From contig NW_025964079.1 in NCBI RefSeq assembly GCF_023055435.1, positions 434,001-498,000 of the forward strand: a stretch of 64,000 bases of DNA, read 5' to 3'. Within the stretch, counting starts at the first letter, position 1. Each line of letters starts with the position of its first letter. The translations under genes and the position numbers were made by a program. This DNA comes from Haliotis rufescens. Its lineage: Eukaryota. Shown here piece by piece: positions 18,638 to 64,000 of the stretch. The notes under the pieces are model-generated. The model was not told the DNA's origin and made no database searches. It was given only the letters and a program-made list of their open reading frames with translations.

Positions 18638-19867
18638 TTAAAACACCGCTATGGACACCAACAGTACTGGGATCGCTATCAACAAAGGTATACACAACAC
18701 CCAGAAGAAAAACAGATCAAGGGCCTTGCTCACTCGATTCCACGTCATTACTTTAGTATGTTCCTTAGCCTCGGAATCATCTGATTGTTCTGTGTCCTCA
18801 GAGATATGGTTAGGATGCGACTTCTTTTGTCGACCACAGCTTTTAACATCTTCAACCCAGACGGTGATTCTTTGGAATGATTTAGGAACGGGTCGTGAAT
18901 TACTGCGTGCTGAGATCCTGACACTGAATATGCTGAGGATGACAAATAACGCAGACAATGATAGCGTGATTCCAAGGAAAATGATAAAGGTGGACACACC
19001 CTCGGAACTTTGTGGTACCATGTTTGTTAGAAATCCCATGTAGACTCCATAGGAAAGAGGAATTGTGATGGCAAATGATACTTTTTCTCCTGAATCTGCT
19101 GGAATGAGGAACACAAATGTTCCTAGAAGAGAGAGAATCATGACGGGAAGGATAAAGTTAAAGACAAAATTGGTTGGGAGTCTTTCTAGAATGAGTGTAA
19201 TTTTCACTGTTGACATTGTTTTGTTGTCAGAATGTTTTTTCAACGAAACGATAGTGGCTGACGTCAAACTCCACTGACCTCGTATATTGGAACTGGACAC
19301 TCCAGCACGAGATTGCCCTGGTTTCAGGTGAACTTCTGTCACTGAGTGTGACCACACAACCAGGTCCATAGAACACTTCAGGCTATCAAATGGGTACAAC
19401 TCAACGTCAACATTACATGGCAGGTAGAATAAATCCCCAGGCATCCACTGTATATGTCCATTTGAAAATAGTTTCAGAGACACGAAATCTCCTCCAAGGC
19501 GGTCGAGTTGTTGGAAGGAATTGGACACAACAAGATCAGGTATCCAGATGTAGCTATCTGGGGGTCTGATAAATTCAACTCCGTCATACATCTCAGAATT
19601 CCAGGTGAGAAACTGATCAGACCACGTCACAACAAACCACCCTGTGCATATGAGCTGTTGTTGAGACTCAATGTATCGGCTCACTGTGTGTAGATGAAAA
19701 TCAAATTCAACCGTAATAGTTTCGGATTTGTTGTAGACGGGCCTCTCGTATGGGTTGTTGTTCCAGATGATGTCATTGTAGAGGCGGAATTCACCAGTGG
19801 CTTTTCTGAGTTGTGTCTCAACGGACACAAAACCACAGGCAAGAATATACAAAATTGGCGACATCAT
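18638..19867 (-). CDS. Atypical nicotinic acetylcholine receptor-like Cys-loop channel subunit, type A copy 1 (single coding exon)
   Basis: 409 aa; signal peptide, RPV, WxD..W, WIPD, C-x13-C loop with YPFD, M1-M3, PADSGEK, W..V...LD..F M4; no loop C CC. Confidence 0.96.
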   Translation of the reverse strand: MMSPILYILACGFVSVETQLRKATGEFRLYNDIIWNNNPYERPVYNKSETITVEFDFHLHTVSRYIESQQQLICTGWFVVTWSDQFLTWNSEMYDGVEFIRPPDSYIWIPDLVVSNSFQQLDRLGGDFVSLKLFSNGHIQWMPGDLFYLPCNVDVELYPFDSLKCSMDLVVWSHSVTEVHLKPGQSRAGVSSSNIRGQWSLTSATIVSLKKHSDNKTMSTVKITLILERLPTNFVFNFILPVMILSLLGTFVFLIPADSGEKVSFAITIPLSYGVYMGFLTNMVPQSSEGVSTFIIFLGITLSLSALFVILSIFSVRISARSNSRPVPKSFQRITVWVEDVKSCGRQKKSHPNHISEDTEQSDDSEAKEHTKVMTWNRVSKALDLFFFWVLCIPLLIAIPVLLVSIAVF

Positions 19868-20626
19868 GGTCGTATAGCATCAGCCCTTATCTTCTTCCTC
19901 TGCGATGACAGCTTAATGCTCAGCACACTTGGCTGCCTGTTCTCAATTCTGAGACCAGCCGATGAAACACACTGACTTTGGTCAAAAGCACTTCTTGTGT
20001 CTTACCTGAAATTAATATGAAAAATAATTAAGTAATTCTTTCTGAATATATGCAAACAAATCTGGTTTTGTTGTGTGAGAGTGCTTATCAATTCTGAAAT
20101 TTGATAACATGCTGACCGTGTTGGGGCACAAATAATATATTTTGTTGTCTTTTGACTTGATCTGTTTGTTGTTTACCTCCGCGCTCAGCAATATTCAAGC
20201 TCTATGACATCAATCTCTGGATAATCGAGTCTGAACCAGACAATCAAGTGATTGACATCATACGCATCGATCTTAATAATTGGTATCTGATGAAATGCAT
20301 CAACCAATTTAGCGAGCTGGAAAACCCGATCCCGGATCTTCACAGCGGAACTTTTTGTGTGCAATGAGTCATTGTAAGATTGATCAGTTAGTCCGGTTTT
20401 CAAACTGAATCTGTGTTTTGCATATGGCATATTGAATTGAATTTATAGTAATAGTGTGAATGGTAGCTGATATTTTGAACCTTTCCGTGTACAAAATATG
20501 TACATTTAAATGGGTACTATGTATATATATTTAGTATCTTAAAAGCCACATGCAGATGGCCAAAGAATTGTTTGCAAGTTTCATTCCGCTGCTGACAATA
20601 CATGGTGAGGTGAGGTGAAGGTTATG

Positions 20627-20896
20627 CGTCATACGAAAAGACGTTAAAAGATAGTACTTCTTTTTACACTTACACACTTACGCCGCGACGTGCATGTGTG
20701 TGTGTGCGTGTGTGTGTGAGTGCATGCGTGCGTGTTTGTCGACGGTCCATACGAATGCCGATTGTATAGTTCTAGTCCACACAGATAGCACGCCACAATG
20801 TATCATTGATACCCCACTCAGACACAGTACACTGAATGTCAGCCGACCAGGCAGGGTAAAAATAAGCACTATCTTTTAACGTCGTTTCGCATGATG
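20627..20896. mobile_element. SINE-derived segment with (TG)n, bounded by ~40-bp inverted repeats (present in all four units)
   Basis: CGTCATACGAAAAGACGTTAAAAGATAGTACTTCTTTTTAC (20627-20667) vs GTAAAAATAAGCACTATCTTTTAACGTCGTTTCGCATGATG (20856-20896). Confidence 0.55.
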
Positions 20897-20994
20897 TAGG
20901 TGGGCGTCGAACTACCGACCTTTTGTTCTTCGGGTAGACTCTCTTTCCACCAGACCACGGATGTAGTCTGTATCTAAATGGCTTAATGAATGTT

Positions 20995-23480: not shown

Positions 23481-23589
23481 ATTTTATCCACATTCCGCAG
23501 AAAGACGTGTCTTACAACTGAGTACTTCAATAAAGACTTTACCACCAAAGGCCCTATTCCAATGATAATACATTCAAAATACCCATAAA

Positions 23590-23800
23590 AAGATCCAAGT
23601 TAGAATTGGTCTTCAGCAACCTGTGCTTGCCATAAGCGATGATTAACATGATCGGGTGGTTAGTCTCGCATGGCACCATCCAAATTGCGTAAATCGATGC
23701 TCATAATGTCAGTCATTGGATTGTCTGGTCGAGATTCGGTTATTTACAGACCGCCGTCATATGGCTGGATGATTGCTGAGTTTGGCGTTAAACAACAAAC
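23590..23800 (+). mobile_element. SINE family 3 copy (in every unit)
   Basis: Similar to 11778-12016. Confidence 0.6.
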
Positions 23801-24071
23801 AAAGAAACAAATATAATCAAAAGACTACTTTCGAAGCAGTTGCACATAATCGAATGCATTGAGTGAGTACATTATTGCTAAGATCTTATGTTTGCAAGGC
23901 GCTTGGTTCTGATAATGCTCAAATTAATTCTGTCTGAAAGATCCTCAAAACATTGTGTGAAGTATTTCTCCTCCCTCAAAATCTTTGTAAATGTTTTGTG
24001 ATGCGTAAACAGGTTTGAGTGGGATAGTGAATTTTGTACTGTACAGAGTGAAACCATCCACGACGATCTCA

Positions 24072-24180
24072 ACTGACGAATTCCATCTCTACGATCACCT
24101 GTAACATGAACCCATACGAGAGGCTTGTCTTCAACAAATAAGAAACTATTACAGTTGAATTTGACTTTCATCTGCATACC
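24072..24180 (+). pseudogene. Inverted 5' fragment of a receptor paralogue
   Basis: TDEFHLYD / NMNPYERLVFNK*ETITVEFDFHLHT vs TGEFRLYND..NNNPYERPVYNKSETITVEFDFHLHT; frameshift and stop. Confidence 0.85.
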
Positions 24181-24424
24181 GACACATTGAGTCACGAGAA
24201 CATTGAGTCATACAGATGGACAAGTGCATAAAACCATAAACAAACAAGCAAACAAAACATGCGACAAGACATACCGATCATTTGAATTAACTGGTTCGAT
24301 GTTTGTTCGCAAAGTAAACTTTTTGCTTTTGCTTCGGCCACCGAATATATGCCCGTTTAGGTAGACAGAACCTTTCAATCACTGGTTTGCCTGGTCCAGA
24401 CTGGGTAACTGTCATGCTGCGTGA

Positions 24425-24587: not shown

Positions 24588-25066
24588 CATGATATGTTTT
24601 GAAAACTGCTGATTGTGGCGTTAAACCATCACTTGATAAGCATCCTAAACGTGGTATGATCACATCTTATCTTGGTCCCATGTCTCTCCAGTGCATGCCG
24701 CAAGAACAGATTGAAACAACACGTTCAGAAATTGTTGCCAGGCTGACCCTGTTTTTGAACTGTGATGACTGAGAAAATCATACAATGTTATCTGTGCTAG
24801 AAACAGTTAATGCGGTCACAACTTCCGCAACTGGACGGCACGTGGCAATCAGTTTGGTTGAACGGGCGTTCGGAAAGGAGGAGAGACACAAACACACTGG
24901 CCAAGATGTTAGCTCACGTTTGATGAGGTCTTGCTCTCGATACACCTCCTGGGGGGTTGTAATTACAATCACAGGCTTATCGTGGAAGAGTGGTTATCTT
25001 GCTTCGATATCGTCGAATAACGATCTATTATAACAGAAAAAAGGGAGAAAATAGAGACGAAGATTA

Positions 25067-25082
25067 GTGTGTGTGTGTGTGT

Positions 25083-25148
<66 letters not shown>
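25067..25148. repeat. (TG)n microsatellite (also 36647-36725, 47426-47484)
   Basis: Seen directly. Confidence 0.95.
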
Positions 25149-25150
<2 letters not shown>

Positions 25151-26396: not shown

Positions 26397-27626
26397 CTAG
26401 AAGCCCAAGTTCAAGCCGATGTATATCAGTGTTATTGGAATTCCCACAAGTGAAGGGATACACAACAACCAGAAGAAAAACAAATCCAGTGCTTTGCTCA
26501 CTCGTTTCCATGTGACGGGCTGAGTAGTCTTCGCCTGAAGTTCTTGTAACTGTCCAGATTCCTCAATTGCAGGTTTGTCACGGTTTCCAAACCGGCCAAA
26601 TGCATCGACCTTTTCGACCCAAATTGTGAATCTTTGTAATGTTTTACGAATGGGTTTCGATTCACTCTGTCCACAGAACCGGACACTGAAGATGCTGACG
26701 ATGACAAATACTGCAGACATTGTTAGTGTGAGTCCAAGGATGATGATGAAGGGCGATATACCCTGGGAGCTCTGGGGTATCATGTCTGTGAGAAAGCCCA
26801 TGTAGACCCCATATGACAGAGGAATCGTTATGGCAAAGGATATTTTTTCTCCTGAATCTGCAGGAATGAGAAACACAAATGTCCCCAGGACGGACAGGAT
26901 CAACACAGGGAGGATGAAGTTGAAGACAAAATGCACAGGGCGTCTGTCCAGTGTAAGCGTAATAAGCACATGTGATATTGGCTTGTTGTCAAAGGTCTTT
27001 TCCTTGGCTGTGATTGATGTTGGTTTTAGCCTCCACTGACCTCCTATGTTTGAACTAGATGTTCCAGCTACTGACTGACGGACTTTCAGGTCAACTTCTG
27101 ACGTCGAATATGACCAGACGACAATCTCCATAGAACACTTCAGGCTATCAAATGGATACATTAGAACGTCCGTTTCACAATGCAGGTAGAATAAGTCTCC
27201 TGTCATCCACTGCACGTGTCCATAAGAGGATACTTTCAAAGGCACGAAATCTCCTCCAATGTGGTTTAGTTGTTGGAAGGAATTGGACACAACAAGATCA
27301 GGTTTCCACACGTAGCTATCTGGGGGTCTGATAAACTCAACTCCGTCATACATCTCAGAATTCCAGGTGAGAAACTGATCAGACCACGACACATCAAACC
27401 ACCCTGTGCATAGGAGCTGTTGTTGAGACTCAGTGTATCGGCTCACTGTGTGTAGATGAAAGTCAAATTCAACTGTTATAGTTTCGGATTTGTTGTAGAC
27501 GGGCCTCTCGTATGGGTTGTTGTTCCAGATGATGTCATTGTAGAGGCGGAATTCACCAGTGGAGTGTCTGGCTGACTCGATAGACACAACACCAATCACC
27601 AAATTACAGATTGTGAAGAGTAGCAT
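26397..27626 (-). CDS. Atypical nAChR-like Cys-loop channel subunit, type B copy 1
   Basis: 409 aa; signal peptide, WKPD, CETDVLMYPFDSLKC Cys-loop, PADSGEKIS, four TM helices, no loop C CC. Confidence 0.96.
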   Translation of the reverse strand: MLLFTICNLVIGVVSIESARHSTGEFRLYNDIIWNNNPYERPVYNKSETITVEFDFHLHTVSRYTESQQQLLCTGWFDVSWSDQFLTWNSEMYDGVEFIRPPDSYVWKPDLVVSNSFQQLNHIGGDFVPLKVSSYGHVQWMTGDLFYLHCETDVLMYPFDSLKCSMEIVVWSYSTSEVDLKVRQSVAGTSSSNIGGQWRLKPTSITAKEKTFDNKPISHVLITLTLDRRPVHFVFNFILPVLILSVLGTFVFLIPADSGEKISFAITIPLSYGVYMGFLTDMIPQSSQGISPFIIILGLTLTMSAVFVIVSIFSVRFCGQSESKPIRKTLQRFTIWVEKVDAFGRFGNRDKPAIEESGQLQELQAKTTQPVTWKRVSKALDLFFFWLLCIPSLVGIPITLIYIGLNLGF

Positions 27627-30606: not shown

Positions 30607-31836
30607 TTAAAACACCGCAATGGACACCAACAGTACTGGAATAGCTATCAACAAAGGTATACACAACACCCAGAAGAAAAACAGATCCAGGGCCTTGCTC
30701 ACTCGCTTCCACGTCATTACTTGAGTATGTTCCTTAGCCTCGGAATCATCTGATTGTTCTGTGTCCTCAGAGATATGGTTAGGATGCGACTTTTTTTTTC
30801 GACCACAGCTTTTAACATGTTCAACCCAGACGGTGATTCTTTGGAATGATTTAGGAACGGGTCGTGAATTACTGCGTGCTGAGATCCTGACACTGAATAT
30901 GCTGAGGATGACAAATAACGCAGACAATGATAGCGTGATTCCAAGGAAAATGATAAAGGTGGACACACCCTCGGAACTTTGTGGTACCATGTTTGTTAGA
31001 AAACCCATGTAGACTCCATAGGAAAGAGGAATTGTGATGGCAAATGATACTTTTTCTCCTGAATCTGCTGGAATGAGGAACACAAATGTTCCTAGAAGAG
31101 AGAGAATCATGACGGGAAGGATAAAGTTAAAGACAAAATTGGTTGGGAGTCTTTCTAGAATGAGTGTAATTTTCACTGTTGACATTGTTTTGTTGTCAAA
31201 ATGTTTTTTCAACGAAATGATAGTGGCTGACGTCAAACTCCACTGACCTCGTATATTGGAACTGGACACTCCAGCACGAGATTGCAGTGGTTTCAGGTCA
31301 ACTTCTGTCACTGAGTGTGACCACACAACCAGGTCCATAGAACACTTCAGGCTATCAAATGGGTACAACTCAACATCCACACTACATGGCAGGTAGAATA
31401 AATCCCCAGGCATCCACTGTATATGTCCATTTGAAAATAGTTTCAGAGACACGAAATCTCCTCCAAGGCGGTCGAGTTGTTGGAAGGAATTGGACACAAC
31501 AAGATCAGGTATCCAGATGTAGCTATCTGGGGGTCTGATAAATTCAACTCCGTCATACATCTCAGAATTCCAGGTGAGAAACTGATCAGACCACGTCACA
31601 ACAAACCACCCTGTGCATAGGAGCTGTTGTTGTGACTCAATGTATTTGCTCAATGTGTGTAGATGAAAGTCAAAATCAACTGTAATAGTTTCGGATTTGT
31701 TGTAGACGGGCCTCTCGTATGGGTTGTTGTTCCAGATGATGTCATTGTAGAGGCGGAATTCACCAGTGGCGTTTCTGAGTTGTGTCTCAACAGACACAAA
31801 ACCACAAGCAAGAATATACAAAATTGGCGACATCAT
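30607..31836 (-). CDS. Atypical nAChR-like subunit, type A copy 2
   Basis: Intact 409-aa ORF, near-identical to A1. Confidence 0.96.
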   Translation of the reverse strand: MMSPILYILACGFVSVETQLRNATGEFRLYNDIIWNNNPYERPVYNKSETITVDFDFHLHTLSKYIESQQQLLCTGWFVVTWSDQFLTWNSEMYDGVEFIRPPDSYIWIPDLVVSNSFQQLDRLGGDFVSLKLFSNGHIQWMPGDLFYLPCSVDVELYPFDSLKCSMDLVVWSHSVTEVDLKPLQSRAGVSSSNIRGQWSLTSATIISLKKHFDNKTMSTVKITLILERLPTNFVFNFILPVMILSLLGTFVFLIPADSGEKVSFAITIPLSYGVYMGFLTNMVPQSSEGVSTFIIFLGITLSLSALFVILSIFSVRISARSNSRPVPKSFQRITVWVEHVKSCGRKKKSHPNHISEDTEQSDDSEAKEHTQVMTWKRVSKALDLFFFWVLCIPLLIAIPVLLVSIAVF

Positions 31837-36643: not shown

Positions 36644-36726
<83 letters not shown>

Positions 36727-37975: not shown

Positions 37976-39205
37976 CTAGAAACCCAAGTTCAAGCCGATG
38001 TATAGCAGTGTTATTGGAATTCCCAAAAGTAAAGGGATACACAGCACCCAGAAGAAAAACAAATCCAGTGCTTTGCTCACTCGTTCCCATGTGACGGGCT
38101 GATTAGCCTTAGCCTGAAGCTCTTGTAACTGTCCAGATTCCTCTATTGCAGGTTTGTCACGGTTTCCAAACCGGCCAAATGCATCGACCTTTTCGACCCA
38201 AGTTGTGAATCTTTGTAATGTTTTACGAATGGGTTTCGATTCACTCTGTCCACAGAACCGGACACTGAAGATGCTGACGATGACAAATACTGCAGACATT
38301 GTAAGTGTGAGTCCAAGGATGATGATGAAGGGCGATATACCCTGGGAGCTCTGGGGTATCATATCTGTGAGAAAGCCCATGTAGACCCCATATGACAGAG
38401 GAATCGTTATGGCAAAGGATATTTTTTCTCCTGAATCTGCAGGAATGAGAAACACAAATGTCCCCAGGACGGACAGGATCAACACAGGGAGGATGAAGTT
38501 GAAGACAAAATGCACAGGGCGTCTGTCCAGTGTAAGCGTAATAAGCACATGTGATATTGGCTTGTTGTCAAAGGTCTTTTCCTTGGCTGTGATTGATGTT
38601 GGTTTTAGCTTCCACTGACCGCCTATGTTTGAACTAGATGTTCCAGCTACTGACTGGCGGACTTTCAGGTCAACTTCTGACGTCGAATATGACCAGACGA
38701 CAATCTCCATGGAACACTTCAGGCTATCAAATGGATACATTAGAACGTCCGTTTCACAATGCAGGTAGAATAAGTCTCCTGTCATCCACTGCACGTGTCC
38801 ATCAGAGGATACTTTCAAAGGCACGAAATCTCCTCCAATGTGGTTTAGTTGTTGGAAGGAATTGGACACAACAAGATCAGGTTTCCACACGTAGCTATCT
38901 GGGGGTCTGATAAACTCAACTCCGTCATACATCTCAGAATTCCAGGTGAGAAACTGATCAGACCACGTCACATCAAACCACCCTGTGCATAGGAGCTGTT
39001 GTTGAGACTCAGTGTATCGGCTCACTGTGTGTAGATGAAAGTCAAATTCAACTGTTATAGTTTCGGATTTGTTGTAGACGGGCCTCTCGTATGGGTTGTT
39101 GTTCCAGATGATGTCATTGTAGAGGCGGAATTCACCAGTTGAGTGTCTGGCTGACTCGATAGACACAACACCAATCACCAAATTACAGATTGTGAAGAGT
39201 AGCAT
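37976..39205 (-). CDS. Atypical nAChR-like subunit, type B copy 2
   Basis: Intact 409-aa ORF. Confidence 0.96.
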   Translation of the reverse strand: MLLFTICNLVIGVVSIESARHSTGEFRLYNDIIWNNNPYERPVYNKSETITVEFDFHLHTVSRYTESQQQLLCTGWFDVTWSDQFLTWNSEMYDGVEFIRPPDSYVWKPDLVVSNSFQQLNHIGGDFVPLKVSSDGHVQWMTGDLFYLHCETDVLMYPFDSLKCSMEIVVWSYSTSEVDLKVRQSVAGTSSSNIGGQWKLKPTSITAKEKTFDNKPISHVLITLTLDRRPVHFVFNFILPVLILSVLGTFVFLIPADSGEKISFAITIPLSYGVYMGFLTDMIPQSSQGISPFIIILGLTLTMSAVFVIVSIFSVRFCGQSESKPIRKTLQRFTTWVEKVDAFGRFGNRDKPAIEESGQLQELQAKANQPVTWERVSKALDLFFFWVLCIPLLLGIPITLLYIGLNLGF

Positions 39206-46571: not shown

Positions 46572-46680
46572 ACTGACGAATTCCATCTCTACGATCACCT
46601 GTAACATGAACCCATACGAGAGGCTTGTCTTCAACAAATAAGAAACTATAACAGTTAAATTTGACTTTCATCTGCATACC
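46572..46680 (+). pseudogene. Inverted 5' receptor fragment, second copy
   Basis: Duplicate of 24072-24180. Confidence 0.85.
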
Positions 46681-47422: not shown

Positions 47423-47485
<63 letters not shown>

Positions 47486-48771: not shown

Positions 48772-50001
48772 CTAGAAGCCCAAGTTCAAGCCGATGTATA
48801 TCAGTGTTATTGGAATTCCCACAAGTGAAGGGATACACAACAACCAGAAGAAAAACAAATCCAGTGCTTTGCTCACTCGTTTCCATGTGACGGGCTGAGT
48901 AGTCTTCGCCTGAAGCTCTTGTAACTGTCCAGATTCCTCAATTGCAGGTTTGTGACGGTTTCCAAACCGGCCAAATGCATCGACCTTTTCGACCCAAATT
49001 GTGAATCTTTGTAATGTTTTACGAATGGGTTTCGATTCACTCTGTCCACAGAACCGGACACTGACGATGCTGACGATGACAAATACTGCAGACATTGTTA
49101 GTGTGAGTCCAAGGATGATGATGAAGGGCGATATACCCTGGGAGCTCTGGGGTATCATGTCTGTGAGAAAGCCCATGTAGACCCCATATGACAGAGGAAT
49201 CGTTATGGCAAAGGATATTTTTTCTCCTGAATCTGCAGGAATGAGAAACACAAATGTCCCCAGGACGGACAGGATCAACACAGGGAGGATGAAGTTGAAG
49301 ACAAAATGCACAGGGCGTCTGTCCAGTATAAGCGTAATAAGCACATGTGATATTGGCTTGTTGTCAAAGGTCTTTTCCTTGGCTGTGATTGATGTTGGTT
49401 TTAGCCTCCACTGACCGCCTATGTTTGAACTAGATGTTCCAGCTACTGACTGGCGGACTTTCAGGTCAACTTCTGACGTCGAATATGACCAGACGACAAT
49501 CTCCATGGAACACTTCAGGCTATCAAATGGATACATTAGAACGTCCGTTTCACAATGCAGGTAGAATAAGTCTCCTGTCATCCACTGCACGTGTCCATAA
49601 GAGGATACTTTCAAAGGCACGAAATCTCCTCCAATGTGGTTTAGTTGTTGGAAGGAATTGGACACAACAAGATCAGGTTTCCACACGTAGCTATCTGGGG
49701 GTCTGATAAACTCAACTCCGTCATACATCTCAGAATTCCAGGTGAGAAACTGATCAGACCACGACACATCAAACCACCCTGTGCATAGGAGCTGTTGTTG
49801 AGACTCAGTGTATCGGCTCACTGTGTGTAGATGAAAGTCAAATTCAACTGTTATAGTTTCGGATTTGTTGTAGACGGGCCTCTCGTATGGGTTGTTGTTC
49901 CAGATGATGTCATTGTAGAGGCGGAATTCACCAGTGGAGTGTCTGGCTGACTCGATAGACACAACACCAATCACCAAATTACAGATTGTGAAGAGCAGCA
50001 T
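48772..50001 (-). CDS. Atypical nAChR-like subunit, type B copy 3
   Basis: Intact 409-aa ORF, closest to B1. Confidence 0.96.
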   Translation of the reverse strand: MLLFTICNLVIGVVSIESARHSTGEFRLYNDIIWNNNPYERPVYNKSETITVEFDFHLHTVSRYTESQQQLLCTGWFDVSWSDQFLTWNSEMYDGVEFIRPPDSYVWKPDLVVSNSFQQLNHIGGDFVPLKVSSYGHVQWMTGDLFYLHCETDVLMYPFDSLKCSMEIVVWSYSTSEVDLKVRQSVAGTSSSNIGGQWRLKPTSITAKEKTFDNKPISHVLITLILDRRPVHFVFNFILPVLILSVLGTFVFLIPADSGEKISFAITIPLSYGVYMGFLTDMIPQSSQGISPFIIILGLTLTMSAVFVIVSIVSVRFCGQSESKPIRKTLQRFTIWVEKVDAFGRFGNRHKPAIEESGQLQELQAKTTQPVTWKRVSKALDLFFFWLLCIPSLVGIPITLIYIGLNLGF

Positions 50002-52999: not shown

Positions 53000-54229
53000 T
53001 TAAAACACCGCAATGGACACCAACAGTACTGGAATCGCTATCAACAAAGGTATACACAACACCCAGAAGAAAAACAGATCCAGGGCCTTGCTCACTCGCT
53101 TCCACGTCATTACTTGAGTATGTTCCTTAGCCTCGGAATCATCTGATTGTTCTGTGTCCTCAGAGATATGGTTCGGATGCGACCTTTTTTGTCGACCACA
53201 GCTTTTAACATGTTCAACCCAGACGGTGATTCTTTGGAATGCTTTAGGAACGGGTCGTGAATTACTGCGTGCTGAGATCCTGACACTGAATATGCTGAGG
53301 ATGACAAATAACGCAGACAATGATAGCGTGATTCCAAGGAAAATGATAAAGGTGGACACACCCTCGGAACTTTGTGGTACCATGTTTGTTAGAAATCCCA
53401 TGTAGACTCCATAGGAAAGAGGAATTGTGATGGCAAATGATACTTTTTCTCCTGAATCTGCTGGAATGAGGAACACAAATGTTCCTAGAAGAGAGAGAAT
53501 CATGACGGGAAGGATAAAGTTAAAGACAAAATTGGTTGGGAGTCTTTCTAGAATGAGTGTAATTTTCACTGTTGACATTGTTTTGTTGTCAAAATGTTTT
53601 TTCAACGAAATGATAGTGGCTGACGTCAAACTCCACTGACCTCGTATATTGGAACTGGACACTCCAGCACGAGATTGCCGTGGTTTCAGGTCAACTTCTG
53701 TCACTAAGTGTGACCACACAACCAGGTCCATAAAACACTTCAGGCTATCAAATGGGTACAACTCAACATCCACACTACATGTCAGGTAGAATAAATCCCC
53801 AGGCATCCACTGTATATGTCCATTTGAAAATAGTTTCAGAGACACGAAATCTCCTCCAAGGCGGTCGAGTTGTTGGAAGGAATTGGACACAACAAGATCA
53901 GGTATCCAGATGTAGCTATCTGGGGGTCTGATAAATTCAACTCCGTCATACATCTCAGAATTCCAGGTGAGAAACTGATCAGACCACGTCACATCAAACC
54001 ACCCTGTGCATAGGAGCTGTTGTTGAGACTCAATGTATCGGCTCACTGTGTGTAGATGAAAGTCAAAATCAACTGTAATAGTTTCGGATTTGTTGTAGAC
54101 GGGCCTCTCGTATGGGTTGTTGTTCCAGATGATGTCATTGTAGAGGCGGAATTCACCAGTGGCGTTTCTGAGTTGTGTCTCAACAGACACAAAACCACAA
54201 GCAAGAATAAACAAAATTGGCGACATCAT
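53000..54229 (-). CDS. Atypical nAChR-like subunit, type A copy 4
   Basis: Intact 409-aa ORF. Confidence 0.96.
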   Translation of the reverse strand: MMSPILFILACGFVSVETQLRNATGEFRLYNDIIWNNNPYERPVYNKSETITVDFDFHLHTVSRYIESQQQLLCTGWFDVTWSDQFLTWNSEMYDGVEFIRPPDSYIWIPDLVVSNSFQQLDRLGGDFVSLKLFSNGHIQWMPGDLFYLTCSVDVELYPFDSLKCFMDLVVWSHLVTEVDLKPRQSRAGVSSSNIRGQWSLTSATIISLKKHFDNKTMSTVKITLILERLPTNFVFNFILPVMILSLLGTFVFLIPADSGEKVSFAITIPLSYGVYMGFLTNMVPQSSEGVSTFIIFLGITLSLSALFVILSIFSVRISARSNSRPVPKAFQRITVWVEHVKSCGRQKRSHPNHISEDTEQSDDSEAKEHTQVMTWKRVSKALDLFFFWVLCIPLLIAIPVLLVSIAVF

Positions 54230-55363: not shown

Positions 55364-58300
55364 GAATGAATATTTTATTTATTCACAAAAAGTGTTAGCT
55401 CTTTTCTTACACCTTTCGGTATCCTTATATGTTTTATGCTGCAGTGAATAGGCTTGTAACGAAACATTATCTTTTATCCTATTAAAAACATCTAGTAGTC
55501 GGAAGGCTTCTCTTCCGTGATAATCACATTCTTTATCAAACCACGGACTGTCGCGTCCATGACGCTGAACAATCCTACGCTTTGTAAAATCTGCTGCTTT
55601 CAACAAATCGTCCGTAAATTTACTAATTGCTGCATTTATGTCTGTTAATGCTAACGTAATACAATCATCAAACAAATGCTCAATTTCATCACATGAGACA
55701 TTTTCTCTTAACCGATCACCAAAGTTATCACGCCAAGTAGACTTAAAACAAACATCCGGCTTCACATTCTCACCCGACATAGCATTGTCAATTTCAGTAT
55801 CACGTGACATGATGATGATATGATGATGCTTTTATTCAGGTAATGAGGCCACCGGCCCATTATACACGTGCAGAGCATGATGGCATACAAATGTGACAGA
55901 GCGCTGAATTATAAGATTTACAATGCAGTGTTCAAACTGTTAATATTGGAGTTAATTATATGACACAGGTATTCCCTTGAAAATGGAATTACGTTTCTTA
56001 CCAGCAAGAAATACATATTTTGCTAAATTGTTGCAAATACTTTGATTAGTAGAGCTGAATAATAAGAACATTTTCTCACGACTTGGAAACATGTGATAAT
56101 AATTGTGTATGAGATTAGACCGCAGATCAAGATAGAACGGAAACACCATACAAAAGTGGAACTCATCTTCGATAGCACTTACAACACAGAGGGGACAGAA
56201 ACGTTCATGTCTTGGTATATTATGATATCTGCCTGTTTCAACCATAAGACGATGATTGGATCCGAGAAAATTCAAGATATTAATTCGAAATAATGTGACA
56301 TCAATTAATCGAATCCAGTTATTATATGAAAATGTATCCCTTACTGCAGAGAACAATTCAAGCTTAGAACAAGATTCACAATTATTGTGCAACACTTGAT
56401 TTTCAATGTCTACGCTCCTTTGCCTAAACTGATGTAAGAATAAGTCAGATCACCAACACCCTGTTGTAGCCATACCTCTGCAAATCCGTAAGAAAACAGC
56501 AATGATTTAACCTTGAGTGCCCAGCAAGCGTTGCCATTCTCTGCCCTTTTTTTCAAAATCAAATTATTATCTTGTATCAATAGTCGAAGCCAAAATTTTA
56601 TAATTTTTTAAATAATGTGACACTTTGACCGAGTTTGTCATCAAGACAGATTTTACAAAGCTATTTGGTGTGTTTCTACTCAAACCCAAAGTCAGTTTAA
56701 AGAATTTACTGTGCACATTTTCAATGTCAGGTGATGCATGGAATCCCCAAACTTCCGATGCATATGTCAAAATTGGTAACACTTTTACATCAAAAATTTT
56801 GAAACAGACATCTGGTGGCAGGTATGAGAATTTACCTAGTCTAGACTGGAGGATTTGAATCATCTTCCAAGCTTGCTGGGCTAATGTCTTCTGAGTTAAA
56901 CTCCACGAGCCCAAAGAGGATAACTGGACACTGAGATACTTATAATTCGATACTGTGGTGACATCATCATTTCCTATCCTAAATTTTTCCTGATTTCTAA
57001 GTTTTCCGCCATTTCTAAAAATGACAACTTTACTTTTATCAGTATTAATAGTAGGTTTCCATTTATCACAATATAAAGATAGTTTATCAAGTCGCTTTTG
57101 AAGACCAACAACTGACACGTCCATTAAAATAATGTCATCGGCGAACAACAAGATGAACAGTTCTAGAGTATGTAGGGTAACACCATGAGCATCACACTCC
57201 AACTCCTCGACAATGTCATTAATAAAAAATGAGAATAAAAATGGAGACAGCTGACATCCCTGTCTAACACCTGACATACAATCAAAGAAATCTGTAAGAC
57301 CACAATCTAATGAAACACAAGATTTGACAGATTTATACATATTTTTAAGAACTCTAAATACTCGTCCCTTGATACCACCCTTCCATAGTTTGAAAAATAA
57401 ACCATTTCTATACACAGAATCAAATGCCCCTTTTAGATCGATGAAAGCACAGTATAGTCTACCTTTTTTGTAGGAAAGATATTTACAAATCAATGTCTCA
57501 ACAACAAAGATGTTATCCGTGGTCTGAAAACCCTTTCTGAAGCCAGATTGTTCTCCAACGATACAACTTTCCTGAAACGCCCAGTTATTCAACCTGTTAC
57601 AGAGAATTTTTGCAAAAATCTTACCAGCTACGTCAAGGAGTGTTATAGGCCTATAGTTTTGGGGGTCACGTGAACTACCTTTCTTAAAGATTGGAAGAAT
57701 AATACCAAAGGACCATTGATCGGGGAATATACCAGTAGACAAAGCTAGATTAAATAAATCCAACAGCATGTTCAGACAAACCGGTGGAGCGTTCTGAAAG
57801 AACTCGACTGATATACCTGAGAGACCTGGTGCTTTACCTGGCTTCATACTGCCTAGTGCTGATAACAACTCGTTTATACTGATAACTTCATCTAGCTCAC
57901 TTTCTATATCAACAGTTCTATCAATCACTTCAGCTGAAATAGAGTTCACAAAATCATCAACAGATTTATAAAATTCAATAAAATCTTTACATTCACGGTT
58001 TCCATGAAATACAAATTCAAAATAACTCATCCATTCATAGGAAGTAATGTCTTTTGAAATCACAAACGATTTATTTTGCAAAGTACGCCAAAATCTCTTA
58101 TTGTCATTATTATTCAAATAATTTACCAAATTGTTGGCAAGTCTTTATACTCTCGCCAAGCCGATGTATATTGCAGTCTGTCAGCTTGGCTACCGGAGAC
58201 ATGAAATGCACGAAGCCATCGCCGCGCACTTGCACGTGCACTTTCACAGTCAGGATCAAACCAGTTACGTCTCTTGTTTGATTGACAGTTGATTGATGTG

Positions 58301-59428
58301 GACGGATTAGTTTCACAATGGCTGGCACATTTTGATAACATGTTTGTAAACAAATCAGTTGCACTGTTTACCTTGTTACAGGCTACTGCATCGTCGAATG
58401 CTGAATGTATCTCTGTCGATTGGTTATTCCAGTTGTCAACATACGTTGATTGATTTTCATCTTTAGATTTGTATATGGTCCTTGTTGATAAAAGACCACG
58501 GGAATTGGCACTTGATGAAGTTTTTACTTTGAGAGAAAATGCAATTGGTAGGTGAGTGGAATCAACTTGATCTCCGATTTGAAAAAATGATATCATCGGG
58601 AACGAGGTTTCAAATGTCAGTACATAGTCAATAACACTTTGACCATTGTAAGCAAAGCAAGTCTCACGTGACTGAAAGGTACAATTGATTGGCGCGTGCG
58701 GAGACTCGATCCGAGATCCGATGTTAAAATTCTTACACAATGAAAACAAATCACTTGTTGTGATAACATAGTCAATAACGCTTGCGCGTGTAGGGGACAT
58801 AAACGTAAAATCTCCCGCACTGGCATCAGATCAACAACGACCATTAAGTATAGACAAGTTTAGAGAAGCACACATATTAAGCAAAATTCGCCCAAGTTTG
58901 TTCACAGTATTATCGAATGAAAATCGCTGTGTGCAAATACCCTCACAGTGAAAATGACACTTGTCAATTTGCAGAGCTCTCATTATATCGTCCTCAACAA
59001 AATCAAAGTCTGTTCCAGTGCGGGCGTTGAAGTCGCCCCCGAGGAGGATAGAGACGTCCCCCACTTGTTGAAGTACATATATTAACACATCCTGGAGTAT
59101 AGATACGCCGCACTTGTTAGCTTTATTGACATACCAATTTGACTTCTCTGGAATAATGTCTACACACCCTATAAGAGTGTCCTTAGCATTATTAAATACA
59201 GATTTCCTTAGCAAAATGAAAACACAGTTGTCACATATTTTTGACCATAAAATAGATTTTGAAAGTGTGTTTTTTATTAACAATGTAATACCACCGGATA
59301 GCCTACCTTGTTTGGAGATTTGGCAAACATCAACATTAAAGTAAACATATTCAGAGAAGTCGTAAGCTTTTAGCCAGGTTTCACACAATCCTATAATTGT
59401 AAATGTACGTATGTAATGAAGGAATTCA
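55364..59428 (-). mobile_element. Endonuclease-only LINE derivative, split by a nested LINE
   Basis: TSD TAATGAATGTT at 55353-55363 and 59429-59439. Confidence 0.88.
55809..58663 (-). mobile_element. Nested 5'-truncated non-LTR retrotransposon (RT; RTE-X-like, tentative), frameshifted
   Basis: KAPG, NYRPITLL, QSGFR, FIDLKGAFDSV, GVRQG..LSP, LFADD; C-terminal ETGRY..CxxC..EDEFHF; AATAAA + (CAT)n tail; TSD TCACGTGAC at 55800-55808 and 58664-58672. Confidence 0.92.
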
Positions 59429-61892
59429 TAATGAATGTTAAGGGTAATAGATACGTTATATTTAATCATACTTATTTTCAAGAGACTGTCCCGTCAGCCA
59501 ACCAAAATGTGTTTAAACAATATGTTAGAGATTTGTCTAGTTACCTGCATATTTGAAACAATACCACGATATGTGAAGAAATTATTTAATTTCCTTTGAT
59601 TCGAAATCGTGTATTTTTGTTGTAAATATATAACTAAACAAATTTACGAAATCATATGCGTAACTGGTTAGATTTTTCAAGAAAATGAAAATATAGAAAC
59701 GACGTCATTATAAAACTATGCCAGTACAAGTATTCGCATACAATGCCTTTTACATTCATATGAGTATGAGTATCAGTTAACATCAAAATAGGAAAACAAT
59801 ATCCATCAGGGCATACTCCACAAAGCGATATTTGCACCAAGACAGCCGTAGCGCCCATGCATTACCACTGATAAAGGCAGCCGTAGAACTAAGGTCGCTT
59901 TGTGGAAAAGGTATCCTGCTCGCTAACAAAACTTACCGGTAAAGATGTAGTTATTGCCCTGGTTAAACACCTTAGTCCATTGTAAATCCATATCCCTTCT
60001 GATGGTACAGTGATATTGTGTCGCAGAAAGACATGTAGTTCGTTTTATCTTCCCTGTGACAAACGTAAAAACATTCCACTCCAAAACGTCCCATCCACGA
60101 TAATGCCACCTTCTCATCTGTTATCAGCCTGTACACAGATCGATGAGGTGCAACCGATATGACTGTGTGTAGGCAGCCTGTTAGGTATCGCACGTCCATG
60201 ATGAATAACATAACAAACACCACTGTCGCCCTGTAACCCGCAACACTGGTTTACACAAATGCCATTAGGACTGATGAATAATTACCACATGCAGACAGTT
60301 GTCGGGACATCAGTTACACAATACAAATCAGTTGATGTGTCTCGTAACATCGAGGAAGTTTACAGTGATTTCCATGGAGAGCCTTGAACACATTAAATAC
60401 TGTGTGATTGATCATGAGAAGTCGTAATCTGTCAGAATCATTCAATTTCCTTATGAGGTGTTCATTAGAGCTGCTACACGCATCCACTATTAAATGTCGT
60501 GATCACTTGTGAATCTAAAACCAATCAATGTGTTCTAAGCACCTTGTACACAGGCAGTCAAAACCATGGCAACCCGTGTAACCCGCTGTTTGACAAAAGG
60601 GATGATTTGGATTTTCCAGCTGTGGATTTCGGCTTTATGTTGACGAATATGCAATCAGATCCAGCTTATGGCGTCAACATTTCTGCTGAATAGTTTAGAA
60701 CATTTGTCTTACAACTGAGTACTTTAATATAGAGTTCTCCACCAAAGGCCATATTCCAGTGATAAAACATTCAAAATACCCATGAAGATCCAAGTTAGAA
60801 TTGGTCTTCAGCAACCTGTGCTTGCCATTAGAGATGATTAACATGCTCGGGTGATTAGTCTCGCATGGCATCATCCAAATTGTGTAAATCGATGCTCATA
60901 GTGTCAGTCATTGGATTGCATGGCCCAGACTCGGATATGTACAGACTGCCGTCATATGGCTGGATGATTGCTGAGTTTGGCGTTAAACAACAAACAAAGA
61001 TACAAATATAATGAAAAGACTGCTTTCATTGTGTGAGTACATTATTGCTAAGATCTTATGTTTGCAAGGCGCTGTATTCTGATAATGCTCAAATGAATTC
61101 TGTCTGAAAGATCCTTAAAACATTGTGTGAAGTATTTCTCCTCCCTCAAAATCTTTGTAAAAGTTTTTGTGATACGTGAACAGGTTCGAGTGTGATACTC
61201 AATTTTGTACTGTACAGTGTGAAACAATTGTGCATTCAAACTGTAAGTCACGTTTGTCTGTTCGAAGAATGGAACTCTTTTTCATCAATTTTGAAATGAT
61301 AATAACGGTCCATATGAACCTCAAAATAGTTTTTGTGAAATATGTTATCTTTGGTTTGTGTTGGGGCAAATTCTTGATGATTGCACCAAAAACGTCAGTC
61401 GAGTCCACGACGATATGGGCTCCACACATTCTACCCATCTGGGGAATAGAACCCGGACTTTCGATGTGACGAGCGAACGCTTAACCACCAGACCACCCAA
61501 CCGCCACCATGATATGTCTTGAAAATTGCAGATTATGGCGTTAAACCATCACTTGATAAGCATCCTAAACGTTGTATGATCACATCTTATCTAGGTACCA
61601 TGTCTCTCCAGTGCATGCCGCAAGAACAGATTGAAACAACACGTTCAGAAATTGTTGCCAGGCTGACCCTGTTTTTGAACTGTGATGACTGAGCAGATCA
61701 TACAATGTTATCTGTGCTAGAAACAGTTGATGTGGTCACAACTTCCGCAACTGGGCGCCACGTGGATATCTGTTTGGTTGAGCGGGCGTTCAGAAAGGAG
61801 GAGAGGCACAAACACACTGGCCAAGATGTTAGCTCCCGATGTTCGATACTGTCGAATCACGATCTATTATAACAGAAAAACGCGGAGAAAAT

Positions 61893-62034
61893 NNNNNNNN
61901 NNNNNNNNNNNNNNNNNNNNNNNNNNNNNNNNNNNNNNNNNNNNNNNNNNNNNNNNNNNNNNNNNNNNNNNNNNNNNNNNNNNNNNNNNNNNNNNNNNNN
62001 NNNNNNNNNNNNNNNNNNNNNNNNNNNNNNNNNN
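61893..62034. other. Assembly gap (142 N) at the position of the (TG)n microsatellite
   Basis: Flanks match 36630 and 36745 in unit 2. Confidence 0.95.
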
Positions 62035-63267
62035 GTGCAAGCACACTGATTCACCATGCCGCAGTTTAACGTTTATCCTCCACTCAGACACAGTATACTG
62101 ACTCCGAGCCGGCCAATCCAATTGTACTATCCTCTTAATGCCGAGCGTCAGCGCATCGAAGAAAAACGGACGTGTTTTTGCTGTGATAGTCACGTGTTCT
62201 CATTACGTTCTACAAACAAGTCTTTCATTGGGGAGTAACATTCAATAACAAGAATGCTTTGTACTGATACATGTATACTATTTATGCTTACTGCAAGTGA
62301 AATTATAAAAGAAATCTTGACATGAGATGAGGTGAAGCGGGTTCAAGATAACTTCACTTATTTTGCGGCCTGCGTGGCTGCTTGTACTAGTCGGGATGTG
62401 TGTCAGTTTCATTGTGGACTTTGTCACTGTCAGCCATTTGAAAAGACTCCCTTCAAGCTGTAAAAAAGCTTTATAGATTGTGTAAACATCATTACCTGTT
62501 TACTTTTTGCACTTTGAATATCAAGGATCGTGTTCAGAATCTGCTAACGATACCCGATGTCTTAAATGACAGCAAATCTAAGTCTCTCGTGGGCCAGTGA
62601 CGTCATTATACGCGGGATTAAGGCCTATCCAGAGTGGCTTAATGATTAAGGCATTTACTCGTCACGGCGTGGTTTTATTTTCTGCATCGGTACACTCCGT
62701 AAAAAAAACATTCCTGGGAGCCTGAGATATGTTGTTTGCTCCTTCAGCGATTGGTTTGGGTGCAAAACACATGAGTTCGACTTATTTTGTTTAATTAATC
62801 GATAATCATCAATTGCAACATCTTTAATCACTGAAAGCATCACATTAAAAGCAACTCATATTGTCATAAATTCCTCAAAATTTATATTCTATAAATATAT
62901 GTCCATTGCACGATTCTGACTTCATCATTCTTGAATCACTATCAAATAGATGAATCCAGGTGTTCGCGAAAATGCGACCGTATCCTGTCCCTCCGGCTGC
63001 TCACGTCACAAGCGTAAAGGCAAGTCAAGTGTTCACCTAAATAAACACAGGAACATCTAGTTCCTGTTTAAATAGGGAATTGCTTCAGACAGCATTGTGG
63101 TGGTTGATGCCTAAAATTTGAAAAGATCCACGTCATATATAACACTGTTTGACAGTCTCCTTACGAGAGAATACATTCAGAAGCAAAGACACATTTACTA
63201 CTCGAACTGATCAATACGAGAGACAACATATAAAAACTTTAAACACACTCCATCAATGATTCATAAC

Positions 63268-64000
63268 CTAGAAACCCAAGTTCAAGCCGATGTATATCAG
63301 TGTTATTGGAATTCCCAAAAGTAAAGGGATACACAGCACCCAGAAGAAAAACAAATCCAGTGCTTTGCTCACTCGTTCCCATGTGACGGGCTGAGTAGCC
63401 TTAGCCTGAAGCTCTTGTAACTGTCCAGATTCCTCAATTGCAGGTTTGTCACGGTTTCCAAACCGGCCAAATGCATCGACCTTTTCGACCCAAATTGTGA
63501 ATCTTTGTAATGTTTTACGAATGGGTTTCGATTCACTCTGTCCACAGAACCGGACACTGAAGATGCTGACGATGACAAATACTGCAGACATTGTAAGTGT
63601 GAGTCCAAGGATGATGATGAAAGGCGATATACCCTGGGAGCTCTGGGGTATCATGTCTGTGAGAAAGCCCATGTAGACCCCATATGACAGAGGAATCGTT
63701 ATGGCCAAGGATATTTTTTCTCCTGAATCTGCAGGAATGAGAAACACAAACGTCCCCAGGACGGACAGGATCAACACAGGGAGGATGAAGTTGAAGACAA
63801 AATGCACAGAGCGTCTGTCAAGTGTAAGCGTAATAAGCACATGTGATATTGGCTTGTTGTCAAAGGTCTTTTCCTTGGCTGTGATTGATGTTGGTTTTAG
63901 CTTCCACTGACCGCCTATGTTTGAACTAGATGTTCCAGCTACTGACTGGCGGACTTTCAGGTCAACTTCTGACGTCGAATATGACCAGACGACAATCTCC
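63268..64000 (-). CDS. Atypical nAChR-like subunit, type B copy 4 (5' part beyond window)
   Basis: Co-linear with B2 up to the window edge; M1-M4 intact. Confidence 0.93.
   Translation of the reverse strand, partial: EIVVWSYSTSEVDLKVRQSVAGTSSSNIGGQWKLKPTSITAKEKTFDNKPISHVLITLTLDRRSVHFVFNFILPVLILSVLGTFVFLIPADSGEKISLAITIPLSYGVYMGFLTDMIPQSSQGISPFIIILGLTLTMSAVFVIVSIFSVRFCGQSESKPIRKTLQRFTIWVEKVDAFGRFGNRDKPAIEESGQLQELQAKATQPVTWERVSKALDLFFFWVLCIPLLLGIPITLIYIGLNLGF

What the first reader, a model, noticed from the sequence alone, without database searches (positions are those of the whole stretch)
18638..64000. Tandem array of intronless, strictly alternating A/B atypical nAChR-like genes: candidate heteromeric chemosensory channel system
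Seen: at least 8 same-strand Cys-loop genes with single coding exons. All complete copies are intact and exactly 409 aa, although the TE ORFs around them carry stops and frameshifts. They always occur as an A+B pair. Established: cephalopod chemotactile receptors are nAChR-derived, single-exon, tandemly arrayed, lack the ACh-binding residues and co-assemble as heteromers; intronless nAChR expansions are also reported in bivalves. Inference: the repeat content suggests a non-cephalopod mollusc, so this may be an independent or ancestral contact-chemoreceptor family (for example for settlement or feeding cues). The paired A/B cassette may preserve the dosage of an obligate heteropentamer.
Basis: partly seen in the sequence, partly recalled or inferred. 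Interest (0 to 1): 0.88.

Follow-up and report, generated by a model that had tools for sequence, protein, structure and literature searches.

The report
Abalone array of orphan nicotinic-like channels
Red abalone carries nine intact, tandemly repeated genes for two kinds of nicotinic-receptor-like ion channel that have lost the acetylcholine site. They belong to a published mollusc gene expansion, the A/B alternation comes from copying a two-gene block, and a sensory role is untested.

Summary
The window (Haliotis rufescens RefSeq scaffold) has seven complete 409-aa Cys-loop ORFs on the minus strand plus an eighth cut by the window end. The genome shows nine in total, A1-B1-A2-B2-A3-B3-A4-B4-A5, all intact.

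The assembly gap is intergenic, about 1.2 kb 3' of B4.

The alternation is mechanical. The spacers are homologous too (88-97%), so a two-gene unit of about 11-12 kb, then a four-gene block, was duplicated. Another array in this genome shows X-Y-X-Y-Y.

The genes are under purifying selection: dN/dS is 0.2-0.7, there are no indels, and the CDS is better conserved than its flanks. Black abalone has A and B copies that interleave with these in the tree.

A sharp tract of about 290 bp is homogenised between A and B by gene conversion.

Three of five aromatic-box residues and the loop-C Cys pair are lost. The GEK cation motif and the 9' Leu are kept.

B genes have a 5' leader exon and an intron, so only the CDS is intronless.

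The nearest relatives are gastropod and bivalve ~400-aa receptors, the expansion published by Jiao et al. 2019. No affinity to cephalopod CRs was seen.

The scan has noted similar arrays elsewhere in this genome.

The parts
18638..19867 (-). A1, intact 409-aa type-A Cys-loop subunit gene (CDS in one exon)
   Evidence: It equals RefSeq-derived P0175. The AF2 model has pLDDT 89.5 and an nAChR fold.
26397..27626 (-). B1, intact 409-aa type-B subunit gene
   Evidence: It equals P0178.
30607..31836 (-). A2, intact type-A gene
37976..39205 (-). B2, intact type-B gene
42556..43785 (-). A3, intact type-A gene (sub-lineage A-ii, with A5)
48772..50001 (-). B3, intact type-B gene
   Evidence: It equals P0004.
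53000..54229 (-). A4, intact type-A gene
63268..64000 (-). B4, the 3' 733 nt of a type-B gene. The ATG lies 497 nt beyond the window, and the gene is whole and 409 aa in the genome. A5 follows at window-equivalent 67853-69082.
19506..19798 (-). Gene-conversion tract in A1 (CDS nt ~70-362, codons ~24-121). It covers the mature N-terminus, alpha1, beta1-beta2, loop D and loop A.
   Evidence: A-B dS is 0.07-0.09 here against 0.7-2.0 elsewhere. Shared mosaic sites are listed. Black abalone shows the same pattern.
27268..27560 (-). The same gene-conversion tract in B1
39261..40551 (-). B2 5' leader. The exon ends at 40538 (donor AG|GTAAGA), the intron is 39261-40537, and the acceptor lies 55 nt upstream of the ATG.
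   Evidence: The exact splice reproduces the N-terminus of the RefSeq B4 model P0180. The donor and leader are conserved in B1, B3 and the relic.
15077..16759 (-). Array edge: a ~79% identical relic of the A-to-B spacer with the B leader exon and most of its intron, but no B coding exon
   Evidence: No tblastn hit lies below it.
56567..59481 (-). Degenerate LINE ORF2 (endonuclease plus RT) split by one stop and one frameshift, in the B4-to-A4 spacer
61893..62034 (.). Assembly gap (N), intergenic, about 1.2 kb 3' of the B4 stop. Not filled.
23693..24202 (+). Inverted, ~76% identical relic of a gene 5' region (A upstream -403..-295 plus CDS nt ~63-212). A second copy lies at 46166-46702.

Best explanation
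Shown:
- This is a nine-gene tandem array in red abalone. It encodes two paralogous subunit types (A, B) of nicotinic-receptor-like pentameric channels.
- The A/B alternation arose from duplicating a unit of about 11-12 kb holding one A and one B (probably by unequal crossing-over, which is inferred), and then from duplicating a four-gene block of about 22 kb.
- The coding regions are kept intact by purifying selection.
- About 290 bp at the start of the mature protein is repeatedly homogenised between A and B by gene conversion.
- The split into sub-lineages predates the divergence of red and black abalone.

Inferred:
- The proteins form cation-selective pentamers. The GEK motif, the 9' Leu gate and a confident nAChR fold are all kept.
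- They are not gated by acetylcholine at a canonical site. The loop A Tyr, both loop C Tyr and the vicinal Cys pair are gone.
- They are therefore orphan-ligand channels of the molluscan intronless nAChR-like expansion.
- A and B differ most in loop C, loop F and the intracellular loop, while the pore is conserved. They probably present different ligand or assembly faces and may co-assemble, but nothing here shows that they do.

My odds: an ACh-insensitive ligand-gated cation channel about 0.65; a peripheral chemosensory role about 0.25.
For: Array and unit homology.

Selection:
- dN/dS is 0.17-0.74 within a type and 0.3 between A and B.
- The CDS is 95-99% identical with no indels. The 1.2-kb flanks are 76-99% identical with 2-19 indel events per 1.2 kb, and are lower than the CDS in most comparisons.
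- The chance of seeing no stop codon under neutrality is about 0.03 x 0.14.
- TM1-3 shows 1 non-synonymous to 5 synonymous changes.

Gene conversion.

Cross-species retention: H. cracherodii has 3 A and 2 B proteins that interleave with the red abalone copies, with 99/98 and 98/91 support.

Family and fold: Pfam, AF2 pLDDT 89.5, and nAChR as the top Foldseek hits.

Binding site against human alpha7: W55 and W149 are kept, Y93 is Ser, Y188 is Ser or Phe, the CC pair is deleted, and Y195 is Met or Ile.

Published context: intronless, tandem nAChR expansions in molluscs (PMC6896357), and divergent or CR-like clades in gastropods (PMC13174522).
Against: - I have no expression, ligand or assembly data.
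- Two of the five aromatic-box residues remain, so weak sensitivity to ACh or choline is not excluded.
- M2 carries unusual Pro 8', Gly 12' and Gly 16', which could alter or abolish conduction.
- Within-type dN/dS of 0.3-0.7 is only moderate constraint, and gene conversion could contribute to keeping the ORFs intact.
- One scaffold gap lies inside the array, so the copy number is uncertain.
Confidence: 0.8

Rival explanations
1. A and B form an obligate heteropentameric contact chemoreceptor (for settlement or feeding cues), and the strict A+B cassette is maintained by selection to keep subunit dosage balanced.
For: - Both types are retained intact in two species.
- The ACh site is dismantled.
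- A/B differences concentrate in loop C and loop F.
- The N-terminal ECD is kept identical by conversion, which could suit co-assembly.
- Cephalopod CRs set a precedent, and a 2026 preprint raises the idea for gastropods.
Against: - Spacer homology shows that alternation follows automatically from unit duplication.
- The ratio is 5 A to 4 B, with an unpaired A and a truncated B relic at the edge.
- Another array shows a similar pattern, X-Y-X-Y-Y.
- Copies within a type are nearly identical, and there is no significant excess of replacements in the binding loops. This differs from the diversifying pocket of octopus CRs.
- B has its own leader exon in the spacer, so joint transcription with A is not implied.
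- There are no expression data.
Confidence: 0.15
2. They are non-alpha, structural subunits that still serve cholinergic (or choline) signalling by co-assembling with alpha-type subunits. The setting could be neurons, muscle or non-neuronal tissues (development, immunity, stress), as proposed for the bivalve expansions.
For: - Loop B Trp and loop D Trp are retained, and the pore is cation-type.
- Vertebrate alpha7/alpha4/beta2 are the best sequence and fold matches.
- Bivalve paralogues are reported in early development and in immune or stress responses.
Against: - The loop A Tyr is lost in the whole ~400-aa family, whereas the aligned fish alpha7 keeps it.
- Identity to any canonical subunit is 32% or less.
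- The array is lineage-specific and copy-number dynamic, which is unusual for core synaptic subunits.
Confidence: 0.2
3. Assembly artefact: the repeated units are mis-placed haplotypes, or a falsely expanded repeat.
For: - A scaffold gap lies within the array (61893-62034).
- The two four-gene blocks are 96.7-97.3% identical.
- Heterozygosity is high for this genome, at 1.37%.
Against: - Seven genes (A1 to A4) lie in one gap-free stretch of a HiFi contig. Read N50 is 15.7 kb, longer than one unit.
- Unit divergence of 3-12%, with many indels and different TE content, exceeds heterozygosity.
- The sequences on the two sides of the gap are consecutive, not duplicates of each other.
- No extra copies sit on other scaffolds.
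- Black abalone independently has multiple A and B copies.
Confidence: 0.04
4. A decaying retro-pseudogene array drifting neutrally, whose ORFs look intact only because it is young.
For: Within-type divergence is low (1-5% nt), and some dN/dS values reach 0.5-0.74.
Against: - There are no stops or indels in nine copies, against indel-rich flanks.
- Orthologous intact copies exist in a second species.
- A-B dS is about 0.7-2 with dN/dS 0.3, so constraint has been long-term.
- The transmembrane region is strongly constrained.
Confidence: 0.03

Closest known systems
Molluscan intronless, tandemly arrayed nAChR expansion (Jiao et al. 2019, BMC Genomics, PMC6896357)
   Same: - The CDS is uninterrupted, the proteins are short (~400 aa), and the genes sit in tandem arrays with lineage-specific clusters of paralogues.
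- The nearest named relatives are Haliotis, Patella, Gigantopelta, Crassostrea, Pinctada, Mytilus and Ruditapes proteins.
- This genome alone has at least 102 such ORFs in many arrays.
   Different: - That paper centred on bivalves and did not include Haliotis.
- Here two old paralogues are amplified together as one cassette.
- There is a sharply bounded A-B conversion tract.
- B has a 5' leader intron.
Cephalopod chemotactile receptors (CRs; van Giesen 2020, Allard 2023, Kang 2023, as reviewed in PMC11526382)
   Same: They are nAChR-derived, have an intronless CDS, are tandemly expanded, have an altered canonical ACh pocket, and form pentameric cation channels able to make homo- and heteromers.
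   Different: - No phylogenetic affinity was seen. The best PDB sequence matches are vertebrate alpha7, alpha4 and beta2, and no CR chain is in the top 60.
- No cephalopod appears among 20 named nearest clusters.
- There is no evidence of pocket diversification between copies.
- Expression and ligands are unknown.
Vertebrate alpha7 nAChR
   Same: It is the best sequence match (182 bits with the profile; 25-32% identity) and among the best fold matches. The Cys-loop, the GEK motif, the 9' Leu, and the loop B and loop D Trp are shared.
   Different: - The loop A Tyr, both loop C Tyr and the vicinal Cys pair are lost.
- Loop C is shortened.
- The M3-M4 loop is very short.
- M2 has Pro 8', Gly 12' and Gly 16'.
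- The RefSeq name 'alpha-7-like' is a similarity label only.
'CR-like' and divergent nAChR clades of the MolluscaGenes preprint (2026, PMC13174522)
   Same: The preprint reports gastropod nAChR-superfamily clades with substituted ligand-binding residues and suggests that they may be ionotropic chemosensors.
   Different: Haliotis is not mentioned in its main text.

Membership tests
Cys-loop pentameric ligand-gated ion channel (nAChR-type, cationic) | Neur_chan_LBD plus Neur_chan_memb domains, and four TM helices | tested here: met
   Pfam E-values are 6.6e-38 and 5.9e-12. The AF2 model has a beta-sandwich ECD plus M1-M4 at pLDDT 89.5. Foldseek top hits are nAChR chains at E about 1e-32.
Cys-loop pentameric ligand-gated ion channel (nAChR-type, cationic) | C-x13-C Cys-loop with the (F/Y)PFD core | tested here: met
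   C151 and C165 are invariant and the YPFD core is present in all copies.
Cys-loop pentameric ligand-gated ion channel (nAChR-type, cationic) | Cation-selectivity signature (GEK at -2' to 0') and a 9' Leu gate | tested here: met
   The SGEK motif and L271 are invariant. Conduction itself was not tested.
Acetylcholine-binding (alpha-type) nAChR subunit | Vicinal Cys pair in loop C (YxCC) | tested here: not met
   It is deleted in the alignment to human alpha7 and absent in all A and B copies and their relatives.
Acetylcholine-binding (alpha-type) nAChR subunit | Aromatic box: loop A Tyr, loop B Trp, two loop C Tyr, loop D Trp | tested here: not met
   Only the loop B Trp (W172) and the loop D Trp (W77) are kept. 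Y93 is S115, Y188 is Ser or Phe, and Y195 is Met or Ile.
Molluscan intronless nAChR expansion (Jiao et al. 2019) | Uninterrupted CDS | tested here: met
   All nine copies are 1230-nt ORFs. RefSeq proteins of 408-409 aa equal the ORFs. B has a 5' leader intron outside the 409-aa CDS.
Molluscan intronless nAChR expansion (Jiao et al. 2019) | Tandem arrays of lineage-specific paralogues | tested here: met
   There are nine genes in about 51 kb and many further arrays in the genome. The nearest relatives are gastropod and bivalve ~400-aa proteins.
Cephalopod chemotactile receptors (CR) | Placement inside the CR clade in a phylogeny | tested here: inconclusive
   CR sequences could not be brought into a tree. 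Indirectly, no CR chain is among the 60 best PDB sequence matches and no cephalopod is among 20 named nearest clusters.
Cephalopod chemotactile receptors (CR) | Expression in peripheral contact-chemosensory cells | not testable with these tools
Cephalopod chemotactile receptors (CR) | Gating by poorly soluble or hydrophobic environmental ligands rather than ACh | not testable with these tools
   This needs electrophysiology.
Cephalopod chemotactile receptors (CR) | Diversifying selection in the ligand pocket among paralogues | tested here: inconclusive
   In loop F to loop C the A copies show 7 non-synonymous to 1 synonymous changes (Fisher p = 0.25) and the B copies 3 to 3. There are too few changes to decide.

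The most novel reading that the evidence does not exclude
A and B are the two subunits of a Haliotis-lineage heteromeric, acetylcholine-insensitive cation channel used as a peripheral contact or waterborne chemoreceptor. This would be a recruitment of nAChR-like genes to chemosensation independent of the cephalopod one. Recurrent A-B gene conversion would keep the N-terminal assembly and coupling surface identical, while the loop C and loop F faces stay distinct.
Probability: 0.12. Interest if true: 0.7.

Novelty: new member of a known kind. Interest (0 to 1): 0.3.

Why it matters
If any of these orphan channels proved to be chemosensors, gastropods would offer a second, independent case of neurotransmitter-receptor-to-chemoreceptor conversion beside the octopus CRs. 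Abalone settlement and feeding cues would then gain candidate receptors.

As it stands, the locus is a clean worked example of three things. A two-gene cassette is amplified by segmental duplication. Gene conversion homogenises one sharply bounded part of two old paralogues. And 'strict alternation' can look designed without being so.

The genes are already annotated in RefSeq ('alpha-7-like'), and the class is published.

Tried and rejected
There is therefore no read depth, no spanning reads and no RNA evidence.
The H. asinina, H. rubra and H. cracherodii loci could not be fetched, so I have no synteny and no outgroup CDS for branch tests.

Analyses that did not resolve:
- Dating the A/B split. 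In the best tree B falls outside A plus the H. asinina/H. rubra proteins, but with weak support (45/62). The alternatives are not rejected (AU p = 0.17 and 0.39).
- Diversifying selection in the binding loops is not significant.
- A and B upstream regions share nothing alignable, so there is no evidence for a shared promoter.
- No B coding remnant lies below the array edge.
- The protein-atlas search gave only generic nAChR clusters.
- The literature search on abalone tentacles and nAChR found nothing specific.

Steps I chose not to take:
- Complex prediction. Any two nAChR-type ectodomains would pass against unrelated controls, so a pass could not separate heteromer from homomer.
- A phylogeny with octopus or squid CRs. 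No tool supplied their sequences, and I did not type sequences from memory.
- The assembly gap was not filled or looked up.


Full report
**Observation.**
The window is G000:C301:434001-498000 of a 1.334-Gb, 615-piece genome. Protein A5 of the array is identical to XP_046363997.1 of Haliotis rufescens, on a record of 4,586,637 bases, which is the length of C301.

Seven ORFs of exactly 409 aa lie on the minus strand. All carry Neur_chan_LBD and Neur_chan_memb. They fall into two strictly alternating types. A-A identity is 92-97%, B-B is 97-99% and A-B is about 69%.

A tblastn scan finds the eighth copy, B4, from 63268 to the window end. The whole-genome search and the adjoining 10 kb show that B4 is intact and that a ninth gene, A5, follows. 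No further A or B copy occurs anywhere else in the genome. The array is therefore A1-B1-A2-B2-A3-B3-A4-B4-A5, with 5 A and 4 B.

The N run at 61893-62034 lies in the spacer about 1.2 kb 3' of the B4 stop, and no reading frame crosses it. The DNA on its two sides is collinear with consecutive parts of the paralogous unit 2. I did not fill it. Because it is a scaffold join inside a repeat, nine copies is a lower bound.

**Why A and B alternate.**
A self-comparison shows that the spacers are repeated along with the genes:
- 17716-24057 matches 29689-35969 at 94.9%.
- 24987-33413 (B1+A2) matches 47346-55808 (B3+A4) at 96.7% over 8.5 kb.
- The B1 and B2 units match at about 88%.
- B4+A5 matches B2+A3 at 97.3% over 5.1 kb.

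So a two-gene unit of about 11-12 kb was duplicated first. Later a four-gene block was duplicated, giving A1 [B1 A2 B2 A3] [B3 A4 B4 A5].

The protein tree agrees. A1/A2/A4 separate from A3/A5 with 99/98 support, and B1/B3 group apart from B2 and B4, which are left unresolved at the base of the B clade.

Alternation is thus the automatic product of segmental duplication. It needs no selection for dosage. Three further points support this:
- The array ends in an unpaired A.
- Downstream of A1 lies a 79%-identical relic of the A-to-B spacer with no B coding exon.
- A different array in the same genome (C113, 6.33-6.38 Mb) shows X-Y-X-Y-Y.

**Are the genes real and constrained?**
Nei-Gojobori dN/dS is 0.17-0.74 within a type and about 0.3 between A and B.

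Coding regions are 95-99% identical with no indel in any copy. Their 1.2-kb flanks are 76-99% identical with 2-19 indel events per pair, and are lower than the CDS in most comparisons.

There are at least 84 and 47 substitutions among the A and B copies. The chance of seeing no stop codon under neutrality is about 0.03 and 0.14 respectively.

The transmembrane core is the most constrained part, with 1 replacement to 5 silent changes in A.

Black abalone (H. cracherodii) RefSeq has three A-type and two B-type proteins on one scaffold. They interleave with the red abalone copies instead of grouping by species. The sub-lineages therefore predate that speciation, and both types were kept in both species.

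These points argue against an assembly artefact:
- The cross-species retention just described.
- Unit divergence far above the 1.37% heterozygosity.
- HiFi reads longer than one unit.
- Seven genes in one gap-free stretch.

Read-level confirmation was not possible.

**Gene conversion.**
Between A and B, dS is 0.07-0.09 in codons about 21-120 and 0.7-2.0 elsewhere. At the nucleotide level almost no fixed A/B difference lies between CDS nt 70 and 362. Several sites are shared across types in a mosaic: A3/A5 carry B states, and B4 carries A states. Exchange has therefore recurred since the array grew.

The 5' border sits at the end of the signal peptide. Black abalone shows the same pattern, 93-99% identity in the tract against 62-63% outside it.

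Outside the tract, A sits almost at the ancestral node while B has a long stem of 0.44 changes per site. Only A-like proteins were found for H. asinina and H. rubra. Whether B predates the Haliotis radiation is unresolved.

**What the proteins look like.**
The AF2 model is confident (pLDDT 89.5) and matches alpha4beta2, alpha7 and muscle nAChR chains best.

Aligned to human alpha7:
- The loop D Trp and the loop B Trp are kept.
- The loop A Tyr is Ser.
- The first loop C Tyr is Ser or Phe.
- The vicinal Cys pair is deleted.
- The second loop C Tyr is Met or Ile.

The same losses hold for all aligned ~400-aa gastropod and bivalve relatives.

The SGEK motif and the 9' Leu are invariant. M2 has Pro 8', Gly 12' and Gly 16'. 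Pro 8' recurs in one limpet protein.

Fixed A/B differences are distributed as follows:

| Region | Fixed A/B differences |
|---|---|
| Signal peptide | 70% |
| Intracellular loop | 60% |
| Beta9-loop C-beta10 | 50% |
| M1-M2 | 8-12% |

From this I infer cation-selective pentameric channels that do not use the canonical acetylcholine site. A and B would offer different ligand or assembly faces. Whether they co-assemble is unknown.

**Gene structure.**
The 409-aa CDS is uninterrupted. The RefSeq B4 model, however, has 23 extra N-terminal residues. These are reproduced exactly by splicing an exon that ends 1.27 kb upstream (donor AG|GTAAGA) to an AG acceptor 55 nt before the ATG.

The leader and its donor are conserved in B1, B2, B3 and even in the relic beside A1. 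In B1 and B3 the leader lacks the ATG. B therefore has its own leader, and probably its own promoter, in the A-to-B spacer.

The NCBI pipeline used RNA-seq, but I could not inspect reads.

**Comparison with what is known.**
This genome holds at least 102 uninterrupted ~400-aa Cys-loop ORFs in many arrays.

Outside the A/B cluster no protein representative exceeds 38% identity. The named nearest ones come from gastropods and bivalves:
- Gastropods: Haliotis, Patella and Gigantopelta.
- Bivalves: Ruditapes, Mytilus, Pinctada and Crassostrea.

This is the expansion described by Jiao et al. 2019, which is intronless, tandem and lineage-specific. A 2026 preprint already reports divergent and CR-like nAChR clades in gastropods and suggests that they may be ionotropic chemosensors.

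No link to cephalopod CRs appeared in PDB sequence or fold searches. A proper tree with CRs could not be built.

The scan has flagged similar arrays on other pieces of this genome. One follow-up there reached the same verdict. I re-derived all three.

**Verdict.**
The A/B alternation, the headline of the finding, is explained by duplication of a two-gene unit. The chemosensory, obligate-heteromer reading is possible but untested.

The locus is a new member of a known kind and is already annotated as 'alpha-7-like'. The recurrent, sharply bounded A-B conversion tract and the asymmetric divergence of B are its most individual features.

Noticed in passing
window 15077-16759 (-): Downstream of A1 lies a 79%-identical relic of the A-to-B spacer. 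It holds the B leader exon, its GT donor and most of the intron, but no B coding exon follows. It looks like the truncated edge of the array.
   Followed up: partly
window 23693-24202 and 46166-46702 (+): Inverted, ~76%-identical fragments of a gene 5' region sit in the B-to-A spacer of units 1 and 3. They cover the upstream -403..-295 plus CDS nt ~63-212, which is inside the conversion tract. Only stubs remain in units 2 and 4.
   Followed up: partly
window 5945-7560 and 10429-11488: Two satellite arrays lie left of the gene array: a 77-bp unit (about 18-21 copies, 89% matches) and a 54-bp unit (19.7 copies, 83% matches). The second coincides with a strong local GC skew.
   Followed up: no
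G000:C113:6331705-6378497 (loci L016, L015, L019, L017, L018): Another intronless Cys-loop array shows two types in the order X-Y-X-Y-Y (X-X 93%, Y-Y 94-96%, X-Y 74-84%). One Y copy carries a stop codon.
   Followed up: partly
window 40536-40551, and window-equivalent 65817-65832: In the B2/B4 sub-lineage the leader exon contains an ATG in frame with the CDS through the splice, giving a possible 432-aa form. B1 and B3 have ACG there and a 3-nt gap.
   Followed up: partly
protein P0174 (H. cracherodii XP_071102298.1): This black abalone A-type model of 326 aa lacks residues ~20-101, almost exactly the conversion-tract region. It may be a damaged copy or a model spliced around a lesion.
   Followed up: no
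A1 residue 270 (window ~19058-19060) and all copies: Pro at M2 8', next to the 9' Leu gate, together with Gly 12' and Gly 16'. Pro 8' is shared with H. asinina and H. rubra proteins and with one Patella caerulea protein (P0033).
   Followed up: partly
window 21427-21439, 33401-33413 versus 55808-58660: The LINE in the B-to-A spacer predates unit duplication. Units 1 and 2 share the same ~2.85-kb deletion of its RT part, which unit 4 retains.
   Followed up: no
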